The notes under the pieces were generated by a model. It was not told the origin of the DNA. It saw only the letters and a program-made list of their open reading frames with translations, and searched no databases. A DNA stretch of 64,000 nucleotides from Chlorokybus atmophyticus (lineage: Eukaryota; Plantae; Mesostigma and Chlorokybus algae), in the NCBI GenBank assembly GCA_009103225.1, contig RHPI01002090.1, forward strand, positions 830,414 through 894,413, in the 5' to 3' direction. Below, piece after piece: positions 3,044 to 49,842 of the stretch (position 1 is the first letter of the stretch; the number at the start of each line of letters is the position of its first letter). The translations under genes and the position numbers were made by a program.

Positions 3044-3495
3044 CAACCCCACCACCCAACCCCACCGCAGCACCTGACTGCCACTGGCACCCCAACCCCT
3101 AGCACACTGCACTGGCAGGACTAGCGGCATTGAACCACTACTGCCCGTGAGGGCGAGTCGCGGCAGGCATGCCAGCAGTAGCATACTGCTGACGTAGGCG
3201 ATGCAACCCTGGCTGCGTCAACAGCAGCACGTAGTGCAAGGAGCGCACGTACTGCAAGCAGGGAGGCGGCAGGAAAGAGGCGGAGAGAGAGGGAGACAGA
3301 GGAGGGGGAGTAACTACGCATGTTGACTAACGGGGCAAGGGCTTAGCGAAGGTAGCTTCCTAGTATGTATAGGTAGCCCGGTGGTGTAACAAGTTGTTGT
3401 TTGCTGGCGTGTGCGAGTGCGCTTGTGTTTGCATGTGTCATGCATGTGCACAATGCAATGGGGTCACATGCATAGCATTGCATATACGCTACACA
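3044..3495 (+). repeat. 5' pseudo-LTR of the PLE (452 bp, intron-less version)
   Basis: By eye identical to 6737-7267 except for a missing 75-nt block and a 4-nt indel. Confidence 0.95.
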
Positions 3496-3784
3496 CACTG
3501 CCCTGGTTGGTCAGTCCGACCGTCCCAAGCCAGAGGCCAGCCCAGCGCGCTTGCGCCATTTTGGGTAAGCGGCTGGCTACCCTATGCTACGGCATGGGTT
3601 CGTGCATGACACACATGCGTTGTGTTTGACGGATGGTCATGGGTGTGGGTGTGCTGTACGTGGTGAGTGCTTGACCGGGAGCACTCTGCATGTGGAATTA
3701 CTTTAGTTGGCCAGTGTATGGTTAGCTGCAAGTAGTGCCCACCCCGTTGGCTCATACATAGCAGTGCTACAAGGGAGCAGCGCC

Positions 3785-6625
3785 ATGGCGTCACCGACAT
3801 GAGATTGGCAGAACATCAAGGCTCGTGTGTTGGATGTGCATGGGCATTGGCAGCTGCCAGTGTTGAGGAGGCTACGCAAGCGAGTCCTACACATTTTGCA
3901 CACACCCTGGCGCCTGTCACCTACTGAAGACGACCACGTCATTTACGTCATCTACCTTCTGACTGGTTCAAAGAAGTGTTACGTTGGCATGACAGTGAAT
4001 TCGGCATTTCAGCGGTTCCAAGGACATTGGAGAGCTGCACAGCATGCTACTGCTACGTTGCTGGAACAAACCATGTGCAAGATACCGGTGCAGTCGTGGG
4101 GAGTGTCACCGGTGGAGCACATCCCGCCCTTGCCCAATGAAACCAACGATGATTGGCACCACCGTGCTGCACAGAAGGAGTGGTTGTGGACCCAGCGTTT
4201 GCGTACGCACGTGCCTCGCGGATACAATGTGGAACATAGCCCCTACAAAAGTGCAAGACTACCACACTGGAGACGCCAACAGTTGAGGAGGCAACCGCAA
4301 CCACGGCCTCATGAACGACCTGGCAGAATATTTGGCTACAGAGATTTCTTCAGGCGCATCCAGAGACTGGCTGAGCGTGTACAACAACAACGCCTGACTC
4401 TGGCAAGTCTGCTCAAGTTCAAGCAGCTGAACTTGTGCAAAATGTTAAACGTACTACAACATACAGCACCACAAGACCTGCACGTGCTGCCCAGTCATGC
4501 TGCAACACTCAAAGAAGCCCTACAGCGTCTACTAGCCAACTACCCAACTGCATTGCCGCAAACCCGCAATGCCAGGTTGCTGATAGCATGCCCGTTTGCG
4601 AATGGCGCTGCTGAGGAACTACAGCTACAAAAACTGCTGTCACACCCCTTGCTGCTGGCAACGCTGCCTGCACACCTGCAAGCACGCCTGGGCCAACCAC
4701 TAGTGGTATGGCGTTGTAGTCAAACGGTGGGAAGAATGCTGTGCAATCGCACAAGGGAGCTCCTGACATCAACCGCCCTGCAGCAAGTACACATCATGTC
4801 GGCTGCGCAGTGTGTGTGTCAACAACCCAAGTGGAGAACACAGCTGCATGCAGATCTGCATCATGTAGTGAGCTGTGATTACAACCGTGTGACATGCTCG
4901 GACGTGCTGCGCACCATACTGCAGCGTGGGGCCAAGTTTCGGAGCCAGGTGCCGGCTGACGTCGCCGTGTGTTGGCCAGCAATCACATCAGCGGTGTCGA
5001 GTTTTGCAAGTGACCTGGAGGAGAAGTGGGGCCAACCTTTCGTGCTACAACAGTGGGTAACAACATTGTTGTCGCTGGTACGCCAACGTGCGGATGCCAT
5101 TGCCGCAATGCCTGAGTACCAGAGACAAAGCCAGGCACCAGATACTGTGGCGCCGTGGGATGCTGCAGCTTTGAAGCTCTTGCACCGTGACTTTATCATT
5201 ACGGAAGTTGACAAGTGCACCGGCACTCTGGTGGCGGTCTGCAAGAAACATTATTGGCTGTGCTTGACACAAGAGCTGATGACAGAGACATATGAACGTG
5301 AAGATGCACCAGCCCAAGCAGTGCTGCAACGGCATGAACAATGGAATCAACAGCACAACTACTGTACAGCGAAATTGCGCCAACAGCCAAAGCTACCGCA
5401 CTTGTACCTGTTGTTTAAGCTGCACAAGAATCCGCCTCAGCCGCGCTTCATAGCAGCGGCGCGTGACACTTCGCTGGCGGATGCTAGTGTGTGGCTGAGC
5501 AGAGGCTATCAATGTATGACACCTATTTGGCATCAGCTGTGGGAGGAAGTAGTGGGACTGCCAGCAATACAGCACAACTGGATTATGAAGGATTCAGGCG
5601 CTTTTGGGAGACTGCAAACGGCATTGAACACCACACGCACGCTGCGAGACAAGCGCCAGCATTTGGTACTGCGCACTTTTGACTTCTCCACCCTGTATAC
5701 ACGCATACGACACAGCGATTTACTCCAGCGCATGCGCCGCTTGGTGGATGCCACGTTTCACATGCGGCACCAAAGGACCTGTGCTACACACTTGCACTTG
5801 ACCGTGAAACAAGATGGCTCCGTACAGCACCATTGGACAGCAGCAGCACAGTACCGAACGGATGAGGAGGGCCATTGGCGAACATTCACTGCTGCGTCCA
5901 TGCATGAAGTACTGGCGTTTGTGTTGGACAACTTGTTTATACGCACGGCGAGTGATGAGCTGTACAAGCAGCGCGTGGGCATCCCCATGGGCAATAGTGC
6001 GGGCGTACACTTAGCCAACGGAGACTTGTTAACATATGAGTTGGAGTTTATGCAGCGCTTGCGTCAGCAGGGACACGTACAACTGTTGCAACAATGTGCC
6101 CACGGCATCTTGCGCTACATTGATGATCTGTTTGTCGTGGGAGTACCAGATTTTCAGCAACTGCTGTGCATGGATCCGCATGTGCCCGGAGGAGGCTTGT
6201 ACCCGCAAGACAGCCTCACCGTCACACAAACAGCTGTGGGTACAAAACTGCCATTTTTGGACTTGGAGGTGTTTCAAACTGAGGACGGCATCTGCACCAA
6301 ACTGTACAGTAAACGAGACTTGCCAGCCTACTCCGCTATACCGTGCCACCGCGCGCCGTTGCCAACCTCAAACACCCCACGCGCTGTGCAGCTGGGTGTC
6401 ATCAGCTCGCAGTATGCGCGCTTCACCCGCGTTTGCACATACAGAGCACACTTCCTCACAGCCATGACGGACTTATTGCACGCCATGCAACATGATGGAC
6501 ACCCTTTGAACAAGCTGCTGACTACCCTGAGGCAACGCCTACTGCGCAGCAAGGACTATGTTTACTGTACACCACCAATGCTGTTGTACATGATGGTGGT
6601 GAAGAAAGTCAAGCAGCAACCATAA
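3785..6625 (+). CDS. PLE polyprotein: GIY-YIG endonuclease + CxC + reverse transcriptase + thumb; one in-frame TGA at 3800-3802
   Basis: VIYVIY..CYVGMT..RF..H and E..W..RLRTHVPRGYN (GIY-YIG); AQCVCQ (CxC); RTFDFSTLYT, QRVGIPMG, LRYIDD, LPFLDL (RT motifs). The frame is open from 3803 to 6625. ATG 3785 (gccATGg) is in the same frame. Confidence 0.88.
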
Positions 6626-20044: not shown

Positions 20045-21227
20045 ATGGAGGAGGCGGCGGCGGTGTTTGAGGTGTTTACGGAGCAGATCAGGGGGAAGCT
20101 CAGGGAGGCCAGGGAATTCGACTGGTACGAGCACGTCAGGGGCTTTGCTGCCGCCGTAGACTGGAAGGTCAGATGAAACTCAACTCCCGCTGTGCTGTTG
20201 AAAAACAATGTACAACAGCGTCACCACCTGTAATGCGGCAGCAGCAACGCGCACAGCACAGTCTGAATTCCACCACGTTGCTTTGATGTCAACCGTATAC
20301 ATTCCAGGCATGCAGAGTAAAGCCTGCATATCGGGTTGCATGTACTTGTTTACTGTGCATGCTTTGCGTGTATGCAATCGATGTAGGCGGTATGCAAATT
20401 GTTTATACACTGTTCGCTGTATGCACTGCATGACCTGTTCGGCAGAACGTGGCTGTCAACAACTACACCAGTTTGCGAGATATCGTCGTGCTCCAACTGT
20501 AGATTGTGTGAGCAGCAGCAGCAGCAGCAGCAAGTTTCAGCTGTTGCCTAACATGCCGAGCGTTGAACGTAAACGTATGCAACTGATGGCTTGGTTTTTC
20601 CAGGAACCATGGCTGGTGACTTTGCTGCTGGCTCACGCCTCGCTGCTGTTATTCACGCTGCGCACACGCAAACAAGGCAACACGCAGACCATCCTGTTCT
20701 TTTTGCTATGTGAGTGTTCCAGAAAGTGGACCACTTGTCACTACTGATGGGTGGCATGCACCTTTGTCAAGCCCAGTTGGCATCCCTTCAATCTGTTGTG
20801 TCTTTGTACATTCTGTCCTGTCCCTTTTCGAATTACTAATTTTTCCATGCGTGTTGTTGCATGTGATTGGTTCCGCAGTGACCGCCATCTACTTGGCGGA
20901 GCCTCTCAACACGTTCCTCAGACGGCATTGGCAGAGCTTTTCCGGCCAGAACTACTTTGACAAGAATGGGGTCTTCCTGTCTGTGGTGTATTCGGGTCCC
21001 CTCCTACTCATAGTCTTCGTCAACCTGGCAAGCGCTGCTGTATGGTATCCATATGTGTGTGCCTTGTCTGGTTGTTATTTACCATGCATGCATGCATGTC
21101 CGCGCAGGTGAATATGCTAATCACAACCTCAGAGATGCTGATACGCTTGAAGAGGACGGAACTGCAGATGAAAAGGAGAAGAGCCACGCAGAACGGGACG
21201 AACAAACCAGAAACCAAGCAAGAATAA
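20045..21227 (+). CDS. TMEM18: Transmembrane protein 18 homologue, 4 exons
   Basis: FAAAVDWK|EPWLVTLL; YLAEPLN..HWQSFSGQNYFDKNGVFLSVVYSGPLL; basic C-terminal tail. Confidence 0.9.
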
Positions 21228-21295
21228 GCTTGCTTATTGGTATGCACAGGCAAATGTCTAACTAGTGCGCAAACTTCCTGCAGCCTTGGGCTATG

Positions 21296-24200
21296 CTAGT
21301 GCATGTGCAGTTTCTGTTTGCTGAATTGGACATAAGACACTGCCAGCATGCCAAGGACGCCAAAAACAATGATGAGAACAATGAGAATGCCCAGCCAGAG
21401 AGGCATGGGCGCGCCGTACACACGGACAGCAAACTCCGCCTCCAGCTCGCAGTGGCTGTAGCTGTTGTCCAGCACGCGTGCCGCGAACACAAACAGACCG
21501 TTTTTGGTATGTGCGTTGAAGCTGATTCCATTTCGGCCTGACCCGTTGAGAATCTGGTAGTAGGCTCCCTGCTCAAGCTTGCCGTGCACTGAACTTGACG
21601 AGTTGAAGCAGCTGTAGTAAGGGACCGCAGCCCAGTTGATGTCTGTGTGTTGGGAAGACTTGCGGATAGGGGAGGTTTTGTTGGCAGCATTGCCCAAGCT
21701 TTGCGCCAGTTCTATTGTGATGGGTGGCACCAAGCATCCGGCCTGCATGCATGGGCACATCAGCTGCATTACCAAATGTGACATGTTGTGTTGGTGTCTC
21801 AGAATTGATTGTGCATGCAACCATGAGAAATACAACATTAAGCACAGTTTGCGAGAGTGTCCTATGCCAGGTGCTATGTGGTGTACCCACCTGGTGTACT
21901 GTGGTGTTGAATAGGTAGTCGGTTCTGCCATTGATGGACCACACAAGGAAGTTGGCGTGGTCCGCAGTTTTCACATACTCGTCGCCATGCCATATCTCTA
22001 ACGTGGGCAGCAAGCCTGGCACTAGCTGGTAGATACTGGCAGGGCAGTCTTTTGTCGTGTAGCCAAGGACAGCATCTGGATTGCTGCTGCATTGTGTTGG
22101 AGGTGTAATGCCGTCTTCATCTCGCACACGCACGCGCAAATACCGTCCTGGTGGGCAACCCACATACACTCGGCCCGTTTGCTGGACAACTGCACGAGCA
22201 GAAGTTACTATCAGCGGTAATTTTGGTCATCTTCAACAGACATGATAGGCACATTGCAGAGGTAGCCAAAGGCACAAACCAATAGCGTACCATCACAAGC
22301 CAGTGCTGTGTGCACCGCAGAAACTCGTATGTCAGTCCATCCTATGCTTTGCTGGGATTCTGGAGGCCCAACCTGCACTTGGTAGTTGTTTTGCACCATG
22401 CGCATGGAACCGGTATCTCTGAATGTTGCCGTCTGCACCGTGTGCGTAGAGATGTACCCGGGATGAGATACCGCCACAGAGAGCATGACATCAGGCACCG
22501 GGCCCCCGTTTGCCCAGTCTGCCAAAGGCACAGCCGCAGTCAATGACGTGTTGAAGGTGGCCTGCTCGTTGGCGTCCAGCATCATCACTTCGGGCATGGA
22601 GTCCACCCATTGAAGCTGCGGGCATGCAGGCAGCTGGCCATTCATCACGGCTGCAGCAACGTCGTTGCCGACTGGTAGTTCCCAGATGTCCAACGCTGTT
22701 CCATTGCTTGTCAGCATGATGGCTCGCAGGCTTTCTGTAACGTCAAAGTCCAATGCAAAGGGCACTTTTTCAGGGAGACCAGACGTCACTTCCACAGCGT
22801 AAGGCACGCCAAGTCTACCCACAAGCACCGCGCCATCACACATGACAACAGCGAAGCGTCCACCTTCACTGACCACGACATCCTCAATCTCTTCATCTGT
22901 TGATGGAGATGCTGCTGAAGCCCTTCGCTTCAGTGCCACAGGTAGCAAGCTCATGCCAAGCATTGGGCTGAGAAGCAATGTGCTCCCAACCCACGCCAGC
23001 ACTTCACCGCTGCTGCATTCAACAAGGCCAGCATGCTCGGTGCTGCTTGCACTGTCCACTTTCCACAGCTCACCAAGCAACCATCTGCCTACTGGCTCTC
23101 CGAGCGTTTGCGTGCCATATGGCGACACGCTGTCTGCAACGGTATGCAAGGACATTGCATCAAATTGGCATCGCATCAGTGCAAAACCGTTCGTGCTGCC
23201 TGCTTGCACGCCGGCCAACCCCAGCAGGTACGGTTGCAAATGCAGAGGAAGTACTTCATGCATTGCAATAAGTGTCCAGAGGCGGCCTCCAGAATCCTTG
23301 TCTGCCACAGCATGCAGTATGAGACGCATTGCAGTCGGTTTGACTCGACACAACTATCGCAAGAAGTGCCTGAAGGCTCAATACTGTGCAATGTTGGGTG
23401 ATGAAAATTGCAACCAAGCAGTATGCTCGTTACCTTGCAAAGGGCCACATGTGACAGAGGTAAACTGCCGCGCTCCATCCGCACTCAAGTAAAACTGCAT
23501 TGAAGCACCAGCAGCAGGCGTCATGACCTGCTGCGGGGCATATGCCGCTAGCAATGGCTGCGGCGGAGGTCCTTGCAGAACTAGCGGGAAAGGGACAAAG
23601 GTGTTGTTGACAATAGACGAGAGGATGGAACTAGAAACGCGCACTGGCGGCAAATCTGCGCTCTCACATATTGTCAACATCGCAATTGCTTGTATGGCCT
23701 TTTGTGAGCTTGGTGGTGATGAAGCTACCCACCTGTTGAGTCTGCACCCATCGCGTGAGAGCATGTAGATGACATTGAAAACGAGTATGCAACACTGCTA
23801 GGGGTTCCTCCCAGTAAAGTGCTTTCATACAAAGCTGTTATGGCATCGTACCGACTCATCTACACACATGAAAGCCAACACGTAAGTATGACAACCAACT
23901 GGCACAGCGTGCTTGTAAGCAACATTGCCCATGCTGGAACTCAAACTGGCATATAGTACCTGTCCTGTTTGATAACTTACAACAGCACCATCTGTTACTG
24001 GTAGAGCATCAAACACGGTCGACTCTGATGTCAGTAGCCTGCCAGCCAGGGCGGACGTGAAAGCGTCAACTGAGAGGAAGGTATGTTGCGTGTTTGCGCT
24101 GTCTGTAACGACAAGCACTGCCATGGTTGGTGCGCAAGGGTTCTTGCGCAGTCGACAGCTGGCAGGAATTGGAGCCGTGTAGCTTGATGTTGTGTCTGGC

Positions 24201-25996
24201 ACTGCAGCCACTGATGCCTGCACAGCACGTGAGTAAGCGTGGGAGAGAGAAATTGAAAAAGCGTAATTGGATACTGACATCGTGCTTATGCATCCGGGCA
24301 AACACATATACAGCCAGTCACCTGCAGTAAGCGTGGGGCCACCCTACAAGCCATGATTGTAACTCCGTTTCCATCAACAACCTGTGGCAAAGACAGATAC
24401 ATCATACCACGCAGTTGACTATGTATATCAAAACAAAGAAGCCGTGAGCATAGCGCGACTATACATAGCATAAATTGTGTGTACACCCATACCACTATAC
24501 ATGCTGCAAGGCATGCGCACCTACCAAGGGCACCAGCCCGGGGCCAGTTGTACGTAAAGTTGCTTGCCACATGCCCAGTGTTTCATTCATGACAAACGGC
24601 TCCTCGACAATGACCTCAGCAGCCAGGGGAGACGGTGCCGTCTTTCCTGGTAATATTTGCTGCCCTAGCGTGGGTTTCTCGCCTGCGACATGGCACTAAT
24701 GGCACATAAGTTTCAAGATGGACAACACGCTTGCCATGCACCATGGTTCGCTTAGCACAAGTCACCTGTCCTGTAGTACAGCAAACTCAGTGTTTTGGAG
24801 AACTCGGAAGGAGAGCTGGCTGTTTGAGCTAGTTCATCTGGAGCAGCAGCATTAGAGTTCAACACCCAGGCGCTGACTCGTATCCTGCATGGGCGCGAAA
24901 ATTGAGGAAAAGGCGAGCTTTCTTCCTGCCACATGTTGCGTCTGCGTTTGCCGGCTTGTTACCTTGAGTATGCAGGCAGAACTAGTCGCGGCAAAGCTAA
25001 GCTCCCTGCTGTTGTGTTTGTTGCAGCAGCTAAGAACCAGTCGTAACACCCAATGTCTGCTGAGAACCTTACGCTGACAGTTTCCAGAACATGCAGGCCA
25101 TCAGCAGCGGCTACTGACGTATTGTAACAAGCGACCTGCCGTCCGCAAGCCAGCACTTAGTTCAATTGCGTTCAAGTGCTGCATGGGCACCGTCTTGATA
25201 CCTGAAATACGCTCAATCCAGCAGGACAGCGCACGGTGGCTGCCACACCAGCTGGCTGAACTCCTGTAGAGCTTTCTAGCGTGCAGGTTGCAGGCACCTT
25301 CCACACCAACTGGTCTCCAGCATAGCCACAGACAGTGGACGCACCGCCATCTGTGCGTGTGCAACAATATTGGCGTTTATGCAGCATGCATGCATACCAA
25401 GCAATGTTTGACTGTTGGTGTTGTCAACTTGTGATGTAACTTTCTTCAACAGCAGCCAATGATGAACCACCACCTGCATGCAGGCATCATCACCTGCAGA
25501 AGTGGTGGCAACCAGTCGTGCTGGAACACTTGCACTAAAACGTGAAGGGTCTGCCGCAAGGCTGGCATATCTCACCTGTTGACAGCTCATGCAGTAAGGT
25601 AAGCAGCACAGAGCAGTTTGCAGTGCGCATACACAGTTGCTGCGCAAATGAAACCGTGCTGTTCAGGGCAGGACTCGGTGCACACTATAACAAAGCTGGG
25701 TTGCAACCTAACAGCTTTTCCAACTAAATGTGCAAATGCAACAGTTCTCCAGCTGTGCTGATTTGCATGGAAGTAAGTTGAGCAAACAACAAAAAAACAA
25801 CGCCTGCTAACAACTGACGCGGTGAGCATTTTGGCTTGAAGTAGTAGCTGCATTGCATTGCATGGTCTCAAGCTGACACACCAACTTCCAAGTTTCCAGC
25901 TGGTAGCAAACTGACCTGTACATTGCTGCCAGCAGCAGCAGCCGTAGCGCTTGCCACACAGACAGCAAACCAGACTGGCAGAAGCAGCGCCACCAT
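21296..25996 (-). CDS. CATSPERE: CatSper channel auxiliary subunit, epsilon-like (signal peptide, large ectodomain, single C-terminal TM helix), multi-exon
   Basis: Signal peptide MVALLLPVWFAVCVASATAAAAG. Spliced C-terminal region VYVGCPPGRYL..DCPASIY..LLPTLEIWHGDEYVK..ANFLVWSINGRTDYLFNTTVHQ|AGCL..YQILNGSGRNGISF..GLFVFAARVLDNSYSHCELEAEFAVRVYG, then TM, aligns colinearly with the recalled mammalian CATSPERE C-terminus. Epsilon versus delta/gamma is not certain. Confidence 0.75.
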
Positions 25997-26309
25997 CGCT
26001 GTTGCTGAGGGTCAGAGCGGAGGCTGCTCCTGTCGCCGCATTCACCTCATTGTAGCCTTATGGCATAGACACACAGATTCCGGCGGAGCAGCCTTGCCCC
26101 CCAGCTCACCAGCCCCCTCCATTGTGCATACGCTCGCTCCCCCGAGTCCCTCACATCTTAACGCAGCCGTCCCTCGCCATCCTTGAGCTGTACCACATAA
26201 CTACTACTTGTAGCAGCTGTACAGTAGTAGTAGCCTATTACTCAAACTTCGTGCTCGTAGCTTGATGCTTACTCCCGCAACCACACCGCCGCCGCTGCCG
26301 CCGCTTCAC

Positions 26310-44130: not shown

Positions 44131-44850
44131 NNNNNNNNNNNNNNNNNNNNNNNNNNNNNNNNNNNNNNNNNNNNNNNNNNNNNNNNNNNNNNNNNNNNNN
44201 NNNNNNNNNNNNNNNNNNNNNNNNNNNNNNNNNNNNNNNNNNNNNNNNNNNNNNNNNNNNNNNNNNNNNNNNNNNNNNNNNNNNNNNNNNNNNNNNNNNN
44301 NNNNNNNNNNNNNNNNNNNNNNNNNNNNNNNNNNNNNNNNNNNNNNNNNNNNNNNNNNNNNNNNNNNNNNNNNNNNNNNNNNNNNNNNNNNNNNNNNNNN
44401 NNNNNNNNNNNNNNNNNNNNNNNNNNNNNNNNNNNNNNNNNNNNNNNNNNNNNNNNNNNNNNNNNNNNNNNNNNNNNNNNNNNNNNNNNNNNNNNNNNNN
44501 NNNNNNNNNNNNNNNNNNNNNNNNNNNNNNNNNNNNNNNNNNNNNNNNNNNNNNNNNNNNNNNNNNNNNNNNNNNNNNNNNNNNNNNNNNNNNNNNNNNN
44601 NNNNNNNNNNNNNNNNNNNNNNNNNNNNNNNNNNNNNNNNNNNNNNNNNNNNNNNNNNNNNNNNNNNNNNNNNNNNNNNNNNNNNNNNNNNNNNNNNNNN
44701 NNNNNNNNNNNNNNNNNNNNNNNNNNNNNNNNNNNNNNNNNNNNNNNNNNNNNNNNNNNNNNNNNNNNNNNNNNNNNNNNNNNNNNNNNNNNNNNNNNNN
44801 NNNNNNNNNNNNNNNNNNNNNNNNNNNNNNNNNNNNNNNNNNNNNNNNNN
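44131..44850. other. Assembly gap (720 N)
   Basis: Run of N flanked by G-rich sequence. Confidence 1.
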
Positions 44851-44881
44851 GGGGGGGGCATAGTTTTGGGTGGAGAGAGCG

Positions 44882-47831
44882 ATGGTGGGCACACGGGCAA
44901 CCACCACCCAAGACACGCACGACAATGAGGTATACTGTCTATGCAGGTTGTGGAGATGCATTAAAGTAGAGGGATGTCTGCCTGCGCTGTCTATGCATTC
45001 TATGCTATACACACTATGCTGTCTATGCTATCTGCTAGGGTGGCTGCCTGGTGGGGACTTAGAGCTGGTGGTTAGGCAGCTTAGGCGCTGTTTGATTGTG
45101 CACCTTGTCATCCTTGCCCCCCTTAGCATATGTGGATTTGTTTGCAGGAGAGCACTCCAATCGGGAGCAAGCGAGCAGCATCAACCCCATTAGCCCCGTG
45201 CCCTTCCAAGCGTGTGAAGAGTCGCAGCAAGCAAGCCCTGCGTAGTTGCATTGGCAGCGCCCGTCGCAAGGGCATGCAGTACATGAACTACCATGGTGAG
45301 GGGATGATGTTGCAGTTGGGTGTGGCGGTGGAGGAAGTGAAGGCTGGCATGAGCCTGAGGATCGCATCTGGCAAATATGGAGTGCCACGTTCCACGCTAT
45401 ACGACTACGTGACCTACCCTTATAAGTTACAACTGCCGCGAGGCCCTGGACGCTCCCCTGTTTTGACCCCACAGGAAGAGGAGGAGCTAGTCACTTGGGT
45501 CAACTGGATGGCGGACAAAAAGTATGCCGTCACTCGGCCTTCACTGTTCCAGAAGGTAACGGTTAGGACTTGGATTAACTATCGTTGTCTCGGGATGCAT
45601 GTGTGTGCTATTCGCATGCATGTGCATGTGCGTGCTGGTGATGCATGTGCTGTTGTGATGCAGTGAGCCCTATTAAGTGCAATGTGTGTTCAAGCCACTC
45701 ATGACCTGTTGCACTTGCTGTAGGTTGTGCACATGCTGCGGAGTGATCCCACTGGGCGCCTGCAGCGTTTTGGACCGCGTGGCATACCTGGTTATAAGTG
45801 GCTTCGCATGTTCATGGCACGCCACAATCTGGCCTCCCGTGTTGCTGAAGGACTAGATCGCAGGAGGTGGCAGGCCTGTACGCGAGATAATGTCAACGCG
45901 TTCTTTGAGTTGTATACAAGAACGTTAGAAGAGCTTGGCATTAATGATCCCACTAGGATCTTCAACGCGGACGAGACAGGCTTTGAACCTGATAACCTGG
46001 GTAAGTCCTGCAAGGACCAAGTGTTAGCTATGATTGCGTGCATGTAGCATGTGAACAATTGGCTTGTGCAGGCACTGTCAAGGTCATTTGCAGCCGGGGT
46101 TACAAGAACCCCTATTACAACCAATGCGGAAGTCGAGAGCATATGTCCGTCATGGCTTGTGTCAATGCTGCGGGCATGTGGATGCCACCTATGTACATCT
46201 TGAAGGGTACCCGCTATACAAAGAACTACATGAAGGTCGCTCCTTATGGAAGCTTCATGCGCATGCAGGAGAACGCCTACATGACCATCGACATATTTGC
46301 CGATTGGTTTAAGAAGTTTGTGGAGTTTGTACCTGGAGGGGTGTCGGTAGACAAACCCGTGCTGCTTTTGTTGGATGGGCACTCCTCCCGTATGAACCCG
46401 GAGCTGCTGGAGCAGGCCAGGACGGCCGGTGTGCACATGTTGACCTTTCCTCCTCACATGACACACCTCATGCAGGTCAGTCAATTGACTGCACGTGCAT
46501 GCTGTTCAGTTGTTGTGCACATGCATATGATTTGCGGTAGTAAACAATGCAAATCTGGCCTACCTGTGGCAGGTGTTGGATGTGAGTTGCTTTCGGCCTT
46601 TGAAAGAGCACTACCGGAAGGAGTTTCTGGCGTGGAGAGTGGAGGAGCCAAACGCACCCATCAGCAAGCTGCAATTTGTGAAGCTGACTTGCGTGCCATT
46701 CCTATTGGCTATGACCCCACGCAACATCACCTCCGGCTTCAGGAGAACAGGTGTGATTGCACATATGTTCAAATGCAAATGCATGTGGACGTATGCCCTC
46801 TCAACCATCCCGCATAGAACATCAATGCCAACATGCACGCAGGAGTGTGGCCTGTGGACGTACACGCACTCGATGATCGTGTTCCGGACATGCCCAAGCC
46901 TACTGCTGATGAAGTCACGCCAGACCTGGCTCACGCCCAGGTGCAGCATGAGTTTGGCGGACCTGCCCTGTATGGTAAGGGTGTGCCTCACCATTCTGAT
47001 CACGAGGACTCAGATGCCACCGAAGATGAAGACAGTTCCTGCGAGAAGGAAAACCGCTCTCCACCTCCATCTGCAGCGCCTCAAGTCAACCACAACAGCC
47101 ACAACACCAATCAGAACAACAATAACAACAACAACAACCAGAACAACAACAACAGCATGAACAACAACATCAATAACGGGGCAGGGCCTTCATCTGGCAA
47201 CATCAACATCCAAGTTAGGCAACCCACCGAGGGTGTGGAGGGGTGGAGGCAGAAGAAAGCTCCGCAGCTGCCAGGCTCTGTGCTTCTGACATCTCAGGGG
47301 TACATCAACATGTTGGCAGAAAAGGTGGCTGCAGCGGAGCAGAAGAAGGCGGGGATTGCAGCGAGGAAGCAAGAGGCTGCCAACAAGCGAGTTGAAGCTA
47401 CCAAGAAGAAAGAGATAGCAGCGCTGGAGCGGCAGGCAGCCAAATCTAAGAGGGAACTGTTGGCAGCACAAAAGCAGCAAGCCAAGGCAGCGAAGGATGC
47501 TGCCAAGCAGCAAAAGTTGGCAGCACAGCAGCAGGCAGTGGCACGAGCAGGCCCAACTCATATCCAGACTGCTTCAGGTTCCAGAGCATGCATTGTTGAT
47601 CTGGAGACACAGGCAGAGCCATCTCACCTGAGCTACAGCCCTCTAATCTGTCTGTCACCAATGGCCAGCCCTGTTGGCAGCCCACAAGCACACCGCATCT
47701 TGTCAATATCTCCAACACCTTTTGAACTGCAAGAGGCCACCCGCGCAGTGGATGCCTCAGTTGCTGCAGCAGCAGGCCCAGCACGGACCCTGCTCAACCT
47801 TAAGGCAGCCATGCGGTCACGCATGATGTAG
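44882..47831 (+). CDS. Intron-containing transposase: HTH_psq + CENP-B HTH + DDE_1 (DD35D) + Asn-rich and K/A/Q coiled-coil tail
   Basis: MSLRIASGKYGVPRSTLYD; VLTPQEEEELVTW; RIFNADETGF; LLLLDGHSSR..(35 aa)..Q|VLDVSCFRPLK; SGFRRT|GVWP. Exons join in phase. The start may extend into the upstream gap. Confidence 0.9.
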
Positions 47832-47954
47832 GCCTAGTTAGCCTAGTTAGTACACTACTGACTTGAGCACTCTTCAGACCTTGTACACACACACCACTTG
47901 TTCCCTTTAACTGCTCCTGCCTTGGCCTCATGAACACGTTGTGCATGCCACATA

Positions 47955-48754
47955 NNNNNNNNNNNNNNNNNNNNNNNNNNNNNNNNNNNNNNNNNNNNNN
48001 NNNNNNNNNNNNNNNNNNNNNNNNNNNNNNNNNNNNNNNNNNNNNNNNNNNNNNNNNNNNNNNNNNNNNNNNNNNNNNNNNNNNNNNNNNNNNNNNNNNN
48101 NNNNNNNNNNNNNNNNNNNNNNNNNNNNNNNNNNNNNNNNNNNNNNNNNNNNNNNNNNNNNNNNNNNNNNNNNNNNNNNNNNNNNNNNNNNNNNNNNNNN
48201 NNNNNNNNNNNNNNNNNNNNNNNNNNNNNNNNNNNNNNNNNNNNNNNNNNNNNNNNNNNNNNNNNNNNNNNNNNNNNNNNNNNNNNNNNNNNNNNNNNNN
48301 NNNNNNNNNNNNNNNNNNNNNNNNNNNNNNNNNNNNNNNNNNNNNNNNNNNNNNNNNNNNNNNNNNNNNNNNNNNNNNNNNNNNNNNNNNNNNNNNNNNN
48401 NNNNNNNNNNNNNNNNNNNNNNNNNNNNNNNNNNNNNNNNNNNNNNNNNNNNNNNNNNNNNNNNNNNNNNNNNNNNNNNNNNNNNNNNNNNNNNNNNNNN
48501 NNNNNNNNNNNNNNNNNNNNNNNNNNNNNNNNNNNNNNNNNNNNNNNNNNNNNNNNNNNNNNNNNNNNNNNNNNNNNNNNNNNNNNNNNNNNNNNNNNNN
48601 NNNNNNNNNNNNNNNNNNNNNNNNNNNNNNNNNNNNNNNNNNNNNNNNNNNNNNNNNNNNNNNNNNNNNNNNNNNNNNNNNNNNNNNNNNNNNNNNNNNN
48701 NNNNNNNNNNNNNNNNNNNNNNNNNNNNNNNNNNNNNNNNNNNNNNNNNNNNNN
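47955..48754. other. Assembly gap (800 N)
   Basis: Run of N. Confidence 1.
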
Positions 48755-49842
48755 CCAAATACAGCGACTCGGTCAACTCCTGGTCCATGGTGGCGAGCGG
48801 ACGTATGGGCATGCAATCTCTGCGCTTCCGAGCCTGCGACGGACAACCCTGCAGCTGCTCACCACTGCTGCCATCAGACGCCATCTGTGAGCAATTGCAA
48901 GCAACCATTATACCAGCATGCATGACTAACTCATTATCTTTTGGGGTGACCATGCACAGCCACGCCTATACATGCACATGCACATGTTAGGAACAGAGAG
49001 GCAAAGGCGTCGAGTCAGCAACCCCATGCACACACAAACATCTACTCTACAACCCCTGCGTTCACACACACAACCACACATGCAACCACCCACACGCTCA
49101 ACCACACATGTGTGCACAGATCAAGGGACAGGGAGGGGTGGACAGTAGTGGCGAGGAGCCACAACGGTGAGCCACGCACCTGCGCCAAGTGGGCCACCGT
49201 CGCCGTCGCTGGACCCTTTTGCGCCACCTGTGTAGGGCGCACACACACTCCGGACAGCGGACTACAACCACCCCACCAGCAACCTCGCCGCCCACAACCC
49301 CCAAACCACTAGGGTTTGGGGGTTTTCCGGCCGTGACATGCAGCCAAGTGTCAGCACAGCACGTCAGCACAGCCCTAGACCTGTCTGACGCCACCTTACC
49401 GCCACAAATGGCTGCCAAGCAGTCATTTGAGGCCGTCCGAAGTTAGGCAAACCTAAACTTTTCGAACTTTTTACCCACCCCGCACTTTGGCAGGAAGGTG
49501 AGGACGCTATAGTTATCCGTTTGAGGTGCCGTCAAGCACATCATGTCCGTCAACTCCTCAGCTATCCAACGTGCTATTACCCTCCCTAAACTGACCACCA
49601 AGCCGTAAGCTACGACCTATCCTTAAAAAGTCGTCCGAAGTATGGTCCACACACCCTAGTGTGCAGCACACTGTGTGCTCTGAACTGATGTCTCTCACGG
49701 TCACGTGACGAGCAGCGACGTGGCGACGAAGAAAAGAGTGAGAGAGCGCTCCGCCAGCAGTTTCCAGGCCGGCCAAATGCGGCGGTGACGGCGGCGGGCA
49801 GATAGCGCGGTAGGGTGGTATTGGATCCTTTGCCAACAAGCG

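What the first reader, a model, noticed from the sequence alone, without database searches (positions are those of the whole stretch)
21296..25996. CatSper epsilon-like auxiliary subunit in a green-lineage genome
Seen: a gene of about 4.7 kb encoding a signal peptide, a large ectodomain and one C-terminal TM helix. The spliced C-terminal part reads ANFLVWSINGRTDYLFNTTVHQAGCL..YQILNGSGRNG..GLFVFAARVLDNSYSHCELEAEFAVRVYG-TM. Recalled human CATSPERE reads ANFIVWEIHGRDDYSFNNTMAQSGCL..YEIINSS..N..GMYVFRVKILDPNYSFCNLTAMFAIETFG-TM. Established: CatSper is the flagellar Ca2+ channel complex of animal sperm, with scattered homologues in flagellated fungi, apusozoans, labyrinthulids and glaucophytes, and it is generally regarded as absent from land plants and Chlamydomonas. 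Inference: this alga may retain a CatSper complex in its flagellated cells.
Basis: partly seen in the sequence, partly recalled or inferred. Interest (0 to 1): 0.88.

Follow-up and report, generated by a model that had tools for sequence, protein, structure and literature searches.

The report
CatSper epsilon-type subunit gene in Chlorokybus
The streptophyte green alga Chlorokybus has an intact, transcribed gene for the epsilon-type outer subunit of CatSper, the calcium channel that steers animal sperm tails. No CatSper subunit is listed for any green plant or green alga in the published survey I could read.

Summary
A minus-strand gene runs from the ATG at 25996 to the stop at 21296-21298. 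One RNA contig spans it and shows 12 GT..AG introns. The spliced frame gives a 1061-aa type I membrane protein, identical to JGI model Chlat1/3958 of Chlorokybus atmophyticus.

The reading as a CatSper epsilon-like subunit is supported at family level:
- Pfam CATSPERD/E C-terminal domain: 87 bits against a cut-off of 27.4.
- Direct phmmer to mouse CATSPER epsilon 5.8e-19, to delta 1e-9.
- A confident AlphaFold model (pLDDT 82, pTM 0.81) finds 7EEB chain H (epsilon) best, at 1.7e-48 over the whole length. Delta, gamma and beta follow, then a large gap.
- The N-terminal domains match epsilon and are absent from delta.

In the tree the protein sits among protist homologues, outside the animal delta and epsilon clades. 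It is best called an epsilon-architecture co-orthologue of delta and epsilon. A clade with Cyanophora and Rhodelphis is not rejected, which fits vertical descent.

I could not test whether a whole CatSper channel exists. Earlier notes of this scan report CATSPER2, a CatSper3-like gene, EFCAB9, and beta-, theta- and tau-like genes on other pieces of this genome. I treat these as leads only. It is a new member of a known kind.

The parts
21296..25996 (-). Whole coding span (ATG to stop) of the CatSper epsilon-type gene: 13 coding exons, 12 introns, 1061 aa
   Evidence: RNA contig with 12 GT..AG joints. One open frame after splicing. Identical to P0001 = jgi/Chlat1/3958.
25914..25996 (-). Coding exon 1, aa 1-27: signal peptide
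   Evidence: Hydrophobic window at residues 1-22. Helix 5-18 in the model.
25494..25573 (-). Coding exon 2, aa 28-54 (start of first N-terminal beta-sandwich domain)
25200..25350 (-). Coding exon 3, aa 55-104 (N-terminal domain 1)
   Evidence: The animal-epsilon HMM match starts at aa 66.
24962..25133 (-). Coding exon 4, aa 105-162 (end of N-terminal domain 1, start of domain 2)
   Evidence: Near-invariant W137.
24765..24883 (-). Coding exon 5, aa 163-201: core of the CATSPERE_NTD2 match
   Evidence: Pfam PF22843 at aa 165-208, 25.6 bits, cut-off 27. Aligned to mouse epsilon 99-236.
24523..24681 (-). Coding exon 6, aa 202-254 (N-terminal domain 2)
   Evidence: Near-invariant G202, P205, W240.
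24321..24379 (-). Coding exon 7, aa 255-274
23960..24216 (-). Coding exon 8, aa 275-360 (start of the seven-bladed beta-propeller, from about aa 287)
   Evidence: WD40-type propellers align from aa 286-292 onward, Z about 15.
23733..23859 (-). Coding exon 9, aa 361-402 (propeller)
23434..23655 (-). Coding exon 10, aa 403-476 (propeller, includes a low-confidence loop at aa 396-430)
22291..23301 (-). Coding exon 11, aa 477-813 (rest of the propeller; invariant C703, D719, C812)
   Evidence: The animal-epsilon HMM match covers aa 548-1056.
21890..22189 (-). Coding exon 12, aa 814-913 (Ig-like domain and first part of the CATSPERD/E C-terminal domain)
   Evidence: phmmer to mouse CATSPERE 736-786, 3.9e-5. 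Pfam PF22850 spans aa 856-1051.
21296..21741 (-). Coding exon 13 with stop codon, aa 914-1061 (stem domain, TM helix about aa 1026-1049, 12-aa cytoplasmic tail)
   Evidence: phmmer to CATSPERE 1.6e-8 and CATSPERD 5.1e-7. Model helix 1028-1059. Hydropathy.
25997..26150 (-). 5' untranslated region (the RNA contig runs about 180 nt further upstream)
   Evidence: Contig piece 25914-26150, record positions 183-419. In-frame stop upstream of the ATG.
21150..21295 (-). 3' untranslated region. The RNA contig continues about 390 nt further, into the convergent TMEM18-like neighbour.
   Evidence: Contig piece 21150-21741, record positions 3077-3668 of 4057.

Best explanation
This is the Chlorokybus orthologue of the CatSper delta/epsilon auxiliary-subunit lineage, in the ancestral epsilon-type form.

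Shown: it is a type I glycoprotein. After the signal peptide come two N-terminal beta-sandwich domains, a seven-bladed beta-propeller, an Ig-like domain, a stem, one TM helix and a very short tail. The gene is intact, spliced and transcribed, and it keeps every invariant residue of the family.

Inferred: as in mouse sperm, the protein sits in the flagellar membrane of the alga's biflagellate zoospores. Its TM helix would pack against the voltage-sensor domain of one CatSper pore subunit. Its ectodomain would join the other large auxiliary subunits to form the extracellular cage needed for assembly and for ordered arrays of the Ca2+ channel.

The gene most likely descends vertically from the common ancestor of Archaeplastida, and ultimately from an early eukaryote. 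It would then have been lost in the other sampled green algae and land plants.
For: Gene model:
- One RNA contig with 12 GT..AG introns gives a 1061-aa frame equal to the independent JGI model.

Family membership:
- PF22850 CATSPERD-E_C scores 87.1 bits against a cut-off of 27.4.
- Mouse CATSPERE 5.8e-19 against CATSPERD 1e-9 by plain phmmer.
- Both C-terminal exons hit the same chain in colinear order.

Whole-length fold:
- The AlphaFold model has pLDDT 82.3 and pTM 0.81.
- Foldseek against the PDB ranks 7eeb_H epsilon first at 1.7e-48 (TM 0.56/0.63). Delta follows at 6e-33, gamma at 1.4e-21 and beta at 4.9e-21. The next hit is an unrelated sialidase at 2.6e-11 with TM 0.15.
- AlphaFold DB clusters give the same picture.
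- A seven-bladed propeller lies at about aa 287-700.

Epsilon-type architecture:
- An HMM built only from the animal epsilon clade scores 251.5 bits and includes the N-terminal domains (aa 66-328).
- The animal delta HMM scores 146.3 bits with no N-terminal match.
- Pfam CATSPERE_NTD2 scores 25.6 bits.

Conservation: all invariant and near-invariant columns of a 52-member alignment are kept.

Descent: the closest relatives are protists of many supergroups, including the archaeplastids Cyanophora and Rhodelphis. A Chlorokybus + Cyanophora + Rhodelphis clade is not rejected (p-AU 0.91).

Link to the channel, from published work:
- Epsilon shares its gain/loss pattern with beta and gamma and with CatSper1-4 (PMC5362262).
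- CatSper genes cluster together in a co-evolution analysis of 1952 eukaryotes (PMC12638846).

Leads only: earlier scan notes report CATSPER2, CatSper3-like, EFCAB9, beta-, theta- and tau-like genes in this genome.
Against: - The channel context rests on co-evolution in other lineages and on unchecked notes.
- No data tie expression to zoospores. The RNA runs are coded and their conditions are unknown, and one run of the same study showed nothing.
- The propeller is too diverged for Pfam to recognise, and NTD2 stays just under Pfam's cut-off.
- The placement in the tree is an unresolved polytomy with long branches, so neither epsilon orthology in the strict sense nor vertical descent is proven.
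- The alignment used for the fold contained animal epsilon sequences. No templates were used.
Confidence: 0.7

Rival explanations
1. Orphan or repurposed relic. The alga kept this ectodomain protein but not a working CatSper pore. The protein then serves another role, for example as a flagellar or cell-surface glycoprotein or as a partner of a different channel.
For: No pore subunit was tested here. Every other green-lineage genome in the OrthoDB-based survey lacks all CatSper genes, so loss is the rule in this lineage. Sexual reproduction is not known in Chlorokybus (my own knowledge), so the sperm-type role is not available as such.
Against: In mouse the auxiliary subunits depend strictly on one another and on the pore. 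Their gain/loss pattern across eukaryotes matches that of the pore genes (PMC5362262; PMC12638846). The alga's protein keeps all family-invariant residues over its full length, including stem and TM, which a freed protein need not do. Earlier scan notes list two pore-type genes and several other subunits in this genome (unchecked).
Confidence: 0.2
2. Foreign origin. The gene reached the alga by horizontal transfer from a flagellated fungus or protist, or the scaffold piece is a contaminant of the assembly.
For: It is the only Viridiplantae member among the 30 relatives whose source I could name. The best full-length identity (26%) is to a blastoclad fungus.
Against: - The gene has 12 spliceosomal introns and the same base composition as its 64-kb surroundings.
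- It sits 70 nt from a convergent neighbour gene.
- It is found in RNA runs of the same organism from two studies, 2013 and 2021.
- It is not nested in any fungal clade. The fungi form their own starred clade without it.
- Grouping with the archaeplastids Cyanophora and Rhodelphis is not rejected and scored better than the quick free tree.
Confidence: 0.05
3. Strict one-to-one orthologue of animal epsilon, with a separate delta orthologue elsewhere in the genome. This would mean the delta/epsilon duplication predates the split of plants and animals.
For: It scores better against epsilon than delta in every comparison. The malawimonad Gefionella has two paralogues of the family.
Against: Animal delta and epsilon clades are sisters to each other (support 76) and the alga lies outside both. 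Published work places delta later in evolution than epsilon (PMC5362262). Delta looks like an N-terminally shortened copy, so a higher score to epsilon follows from shared ancestral architecture.
Confidence: 0.05

Closest known systems
Mouse/human CATSPER epsilon (CATSPERE, C1orf101; PDB 7EEB chain H, 9UBW chain H)
   Same: Same order of parts from end to end: signal peptide, two N-terminal domains, seven-bladed beta-propeller, Ig-like domain, stem, single TM, short tail. It is the best sequence hit (5.8e-19) and the best structural hit (1.7e-48, TM 0.56/0.63). The motifs around ..ANF.VW.I.GR.DY.FN.T.. and ..Y.ILN.S....G.....LD..YS.C.L...FA... are shared.
   Different: Only about 16% identity over the structure alignment. 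The propeller is not recognisable by Pfam. The alga branches outside the animal epsilon clade. The host is an alga with zoospores, not sperm. Association with a pore is not shown.
Mouse CATSPER delta (CATSPERD, TMEM146; 7EEB chain G)
   Same: Shares the propeller, Ig-like, stem and TM part and the Pfam C-terminal domain (1e-9; 6e-33).
   Different: Delta lacks the N-terminal domains that the alga has. The delta HMM matches only aa 566-1058, and the family profile aligns to delta from position 254 on. Delta arose later in evolution (PMC5362262).
Protist and fungal CATSPERD/E-domain proteins (Thecamonas trahens AMSG_04647, Cyanophora paradoxa, Rhodelphis marinus, Gefionella, Paratrimastix, Sorochytrium, chytrids)
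   Same: Same length class (900-1060 aa) and the same two Pfam matches, NTD2 + CATSPERD-E_C. They are 22-26% identical over the full length and sit in the same unresolved part of the tree.
   Different: None of the named ones is from Viridiplantae. The next relative is only 43% identical, and only in the C-terminal domain.
CATSPER beta and gamma (7EEB chains E, F)
   Same: Same general build of propeller + Ig-like + stem + TM, with weaker structural matches (about 1e-21; Z 22 for beta).
   Different: Different N-terminal parts. The Pfam C-terminal domains of beta and gamma score only 14 bits or less here.

Membership tests
CatSper delta/epsilon auxiliary subunits (Pfam PF22850 family) | CATSPERD/E C-terminal domain (Ig-like/stem/TM region) above the curated threshold | tested here: met
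   87.1 bits against a cut-off of 27.4, aa 856-1051, profile positions 29-206 of 215. The two exons hit mouse CATSPERE colinearly.
CatSper delta/epsilon auxiliary subunits (Pfam PF22850 family) | Type I topology: cleavable signal peptide, large glycosylated ectodomain, one C-terminal TM helix, short cytoplasmic tail | tested here: met
   Only two hydrophobic segments (1-22 and about 1026-1049). Ten sequons, all in the ectodomain. A 12-aa tail. Model helix 1028-1059. No dedicated signal-peptide predictor was available.
CatSper delta/epsilon auxiliary subunits (Pfam PF22850 family) | Whole-length fold: seven-bladed beta-propeller followed by Ig-like and stem domains, matching the solved subunits better than anything else | tested here: met
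   Foldseek puts the four CatSper auxiliary chains first (1.7e-48 to 4.9e-21). The next hit is at 2.6e-11 with TM 0.15. The propeller at aa 287-700 matches WD40 propellers at Z about 15.
CatSper delta/epsilon auxiliary subunits (Pfam PF22850 family) | Family-invariant residues (cysteines of the propeller/stem region and others) | tested here: met
   C703, D719, P875 and C1011 are invariant. W137, W168, G202, P205, W240, C812, C825, P826, C916, C958, Y975, F999, D1005, S1009, L1013, F1017 and G1023 are at least 90% conserved. All are present in this protein.
CATSPER epsilon specifically | Epsilon-type N-terminal domains ahead of the propeller, absent from delta | tested here: met
   The animal-epsilon-only HMM matches aa 66-328 at 54.9 bits, and the delta HMM has no match there. 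BLAST against a mammal-like epsilon representative covers aa 65-354 at 8e-7. Pfam CATSPERE_NTD2 scores 25.6 bits, just under its cut-off of 27.
CATSPER epsilon specifically | Phylogenetic position inside the epsilon clade, apart from delta | tested here: not met
   In a quick ML tree of 73 members, animal delta and animal epsilon are sisters (support 76). The alga lies in the protist/fungal half, unresolved. It is therefore a co-orthologue of both with the epsilon build.
CatSper channel complex | Four CATSPER1-4-type pore subunits encoded in the same genome | not tested
   They are outside the window and no remaining tool could search the genome. Earlier scan notes s1-078828 (CATSPER2) and s1-078795 (CatSper3-like) are unchecked leads.
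CatSper channel complex | Physical assembly with the pore and localisation in the flagellar membrane | not testable with these tools
   Needs zoospore flagellar proteomics, localisation or co-purification.
CatSper channel complex | Expression in flagellated cells | tested here: inconclusive
   Spliced mRNA is present in run X1 across the full length, with parts in X2 and X3 and none laid in X4. The life stages of the samples are not known to me.

The most novel reading that the evidence does not exclude
Chlorokybus retains a near-complete CatSper channel (pore subunits plus epsilon-type, beta-type, EFCAB9, theta and tau parts) that controls Ca2+ entry and steering in its zoospore flagella. This would be the first such complex in Viridiplantae. 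It would place CatSper in the common ancestor of Archaeplastida, with repeated loss in chlorophytes, later streptophyte algae and land plants, including those that still make swimming sperm.
Probability: 0.5. Interest if true: 0.72.

Novelty: new member of a known kind. Interest (0 to 1): 0.6.

Why it matters
CatSper is studied almost only in animal sperm. It cannot be expressed heterologously, and its many subunits have been traced to a few protists and zoosporic fungi.

A survey of 1952 eukaryotic proteomes lists no CatSper gene in any green plant or green alga (PMC12638846 source data). I found no paper that mentions CatSper together with Chlorokybus.

An intact, expressed epsilon-type subunit in one of the deepest streptophyte branches has three consequences:
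- It extends the family to Viridiplantae.
- It supports an origin of the auxiliary cage before the major eukaryote groups split.
- It raises a concrete question: which Ca2+ channel replaced CatSper in the swimming sperm of charophytes, mosses and ferns.

It also offers a distant sequence for defining which ectodomain features are truly essential. On its own it is one subunit of a known family. Its weight depends on the rest of the complex being confirmed.

Tried and rejected
- Pfam on raw ORF pieces found only the C-terminal domain and no propeller family. phmmer of the 336-aa propeller exon against the PDB gave only chance hits.
- The ESM Atlas search with that exon gave weak propeller-like leads below the trust level.
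- All three word-indexed homology searches (whole protein, profile A1, C-terminal region) returned only the protein itself. In two of them alanine-rich words swamped the candidates. They say only that no near relative of similar length is indexed.
- One Pfam call failed on the size limit and was repeated.
- Cai et al. 2014 (PMC4169769) is not held. The supplement of PMC6509283 is not held.
- One paper search was wasted on a badly chosen term.
- The careful mixture-model tree did not finish in time. I used LG+G4 quick instead.
- The VIA second look lists only one chain per entry and showed beta rather than epsilon for 7EEB. It served only for the propeller boundaries.
- The low G+C at 42-50 kb is caused by runs of N, not by foreign DNA.
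- Contamination and gene transfer were considered and judged unlikely (see rivals).
- I could not obtain any CatSper pore sequence by reference, so I did not search for pore subunits rather than type a sequence from memory.
Full report
**The gene**

The stretch holds a minus-strand gene.

RNA run X1 holds 61% of the sampled words of the 4.8-kb stretch. One of its contigs, 4057 nt long, lies on the whole gene without a mismatch. It skips 12 segments: 21742-21889, 22190-22290, 23302-23433, 23656-23732, 23860-23959, 24217-24320, 24380-24522, 24682-24764, 24884-24961, 25134-25199, 25351-25493 and 25574-25913. Each has GT..AG ends on the minus strand. A second run from another study (X2, 2013) covers the last intron and the 3' end. 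A third run, X3, covers only the 3' end, about 140 nt downstream of that intron.

Joining the 13 exons gives one open frame from the ATG at 25996 to the stop at 21298-21296. It is 1061 aa long, with an in-frame stop upstream of the ATG.

The exhaustive protein search returned a database protein, P0001, that is identical to my spliced product over all 1061 residues. Its source name is eukprot jgi/Chlat1/3958/Chrsp26S04038, the JGI gene model of Chlorokybus atmophyticus. Chlorokybus is a streptophyte alga of the class Chlorokybophyceae. The transcript evidence and an independent annotation therefore agree, and both ends belong to one mRNA.

**Topology**

There are only two hydrophobic segments, residues 1-22 and about 1026-1049, followed by a 12-residue tail. 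All ten N-x-S/T sequons lie between them.

**Family membership**

- On the full protein, Pfam gives CATSPERD-E_C at 1.6e-24 and 87.1 bits (cut-off 27.4) over aa 856-1051. CATSPERE_NTD2 scores 25.6 bits (cut-off 27) at aa 165-208.
- Plain phmmer against all PDB chains finds only CatSper subunits. Mouse epsilon (9UBW_H, 7EEB_H) scores 5.8e-19 and delta 1e-9, with a weak second alignment of aa 165-313 to the N-terminal part of epsilon.
- The last two exons searched separately hit the same epsilon chain at consecutive positions, 736-786 and 809-915. The similarity therefore crosses the intron in register.

**Relatives**

The exhaustive HMMER search with the last exon found 175 cluster representatives at E up to 0.001.

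I looked up the sources of 30 of them; those that carry an organism name are Fabomonas (ancyromonad), Sorochytrium (blastoclad), Rhodelphis, Cyanophora (glaucophyte), Phlyctochytrium and other zoosporic fungi, Gefionella (malawimonad, two paralogues), Thecamonas (apusomonad), Paratrimastix (metamonad), Chromosphaera (ichthyosporean), Gromia (rhizarian), Mantamonas and a tardigrade. Others are unnamed metagenome or transcriptome contigs. None of the named ones is a green alga or plant. The best non-self hit is only 43% identical, and only in the C-terminal domain.

Fifty-two full-length members align with the alga over their whole length at 16-26% identity. The alga keeps every invariant and near-invariant column.

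**Fold**

With that alignment, AlphaFold2 gives a confident model with mean pLDDT 82.3 and pTM 0.81.

| Foldseek hit in the PDB | E-value | Note |
|---|---|---|
| 7eeb_H, CATSPER epsilon | 1.7e-48 | TM 0.56/0.63 over about 1100 columns |
| 7eeb_G, delta | 6.1e-33 | |
| 7eeb_F, gamma | 1.4e-21 | |
| 7eeb_E, beta | 4.9e-21 | |
| Bacterial sialidases (next hits) | 2.6e-11 | TM 0.15 |

AlphaFold DB clusters give the same order of families. The second-look aligner matches seven-bladed WD40-type propellers to aa 287-700 at Z about 15.

Reading the model, the parts are approximately:
- signal peptide
- two beta-sandwich domains (about aa 26-145 and 156-280)
- propeller (about aa 287-790)
- Ig-like domain (about aa 797-900)
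- stem (about aa 905-1022)
- TM helix

These boundaries are approximate and inferred from the model. The alignment contained animal epsilon sequences, which helps the model, but no templates were used.

**Epsilon or delta**

I labelled the animal clades by their similarity to the mouse fragments printed. I then built one HMM from the 18 animal epsilon-clade representatives and one from the 10 delta-clade representatives.

- The alga scores 251.5 bits against epsilon in two pieces, aa 66-328 and aa 548-1056.
- It scores 146.3 bits against delta, with a match only from aa 566 on.
- The family profile aligns to the solved delta chain only from profile position 254, but to epsilon from position 3.

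The alga therefore has the epsilon build.

In a quick maximum-likelihood tree of 73 members, the animal delta and epsilon clades are sisters (support 76). The alga lies in the other half, in an unresolved group with Cyanophora, Thecamonas, Gefionella and others. The tool gave a long-branch warning. This agrees with the published view that epsilon is ancient and delta arose later (PMC5362262). The alga's protein is best called a co-orthologue of delta and epsilon that keeps the ancestral epsilon architecture.

Holding Chlorokybus, Cyanophora and Rhodelphis together as one clade is not rejected (p-AU 0.91). That tree even scored 49 log-likelihood units better than the short free search. This is compatible with vertical descent within Archaeplastida but does not prove it.

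**How it probably works**

[quoted passage not shown] Neighbouring channel units touch through these domains in the flagellar rows (PMC12638846). Expression of the subunits is interdependent. Epsilon shares its gain/loss pattern across eukaryotes with beta, gamma and the four pore genes (PMC5362262). CatSper genes cluster in a co-evolution analysis (PMC12638846).

From my own knowledge of the 7EEB structure, each auxiliary TM helix packs on the voltage sensor of one pore subunit. I did not verify this in a held paper.

By inference, the alga's protein does the same job in the flagella of its biflagellate zoospores. This step is not shown here.

Earlier notes of this scan report an intact, transcribed CATSPER2 gene (s1-078828), a CatSper3-like gene (s1-078795) and EFCAB9 (s1-171900). 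They also report beta-like, theta-like and tau-like candidates on other pieces of the same genome. They fit the inference, but I could not check any of them.

**What is known**

In the source data of Fig. 3 of PMC12638846, all land plants, Klebsormidium nitens, the chlorophytes and the red algae of OrthoDB v11 have empty cells for every CatSper subunit. Chlorokybus is not among the species. A review states that Arabidopsis lacks CatSper and asks for more plant species to be examined (PMC5406480). No held paper contains both 'CatSper' and 'Chlorokybus'. The searches with Viridiplantae, Archaeplastida, green algae and land plants turned up no report of a CatSper subunit in the green lineage.

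The gene model and its automatic Pfam labels already sit in public databases. What is new is the recognition and the lineage, not the sequence.

**Verdict**

The family assignment is supported, with the refinement above. The claim of a whole CatSper complex remains an inference to be tested on the rest of the genome. It is a new member of a known kind, of moderate to good interest.

Noticed in passing
window 20208-21230 (+): A convergent neighbour gene has a weak TMEM18 match (24.5 bits, cut-off 26.9). Its stop lies about 70 nt from the stop of the CatSper epsilon-type gene. The RNA contig of the epsilon-type gene runs about 390 nt on into this neighbour, so the two 3' UTRs overlap or the assembler merged two convergent transcripts.
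   Followed up: partly
window about 44132-44900 and about 47930-48950: Runs of N (assembly gaps) cause the apparent low G+C at 42-50 kb and the false ORFs in all six frames there.
   Followed up: yes
window 3827-6625 (+): A 932-aa open frame has no Pfam match at E up to 0.001. An earlier scan note calls this region a Penelope-like retroelement. I did not examine it.
   Followed up: no
protein P0088 (2470 aa): One family hit is 2470 aa long and matches the C-terminal CATSPERD/E exon in six separate stretches. This suggests a protein with repeated copies of this domain. Its source is unknown.
   Followed up: no
proteins P0112 and P0080/P0154: The malawimonad Gefionella okellyi has two distinct paralogues of the delta/epsilon family, so duplication of this subunit is not confined to animals.
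   Followed up: no
window 21254, 21262, 21305: A short contig of run X3 (same study as X1) carries three base differences in the 3' end of the gene and then diverges. It may come from another strain, an allele or a chimeric contig.
   Followed up: no
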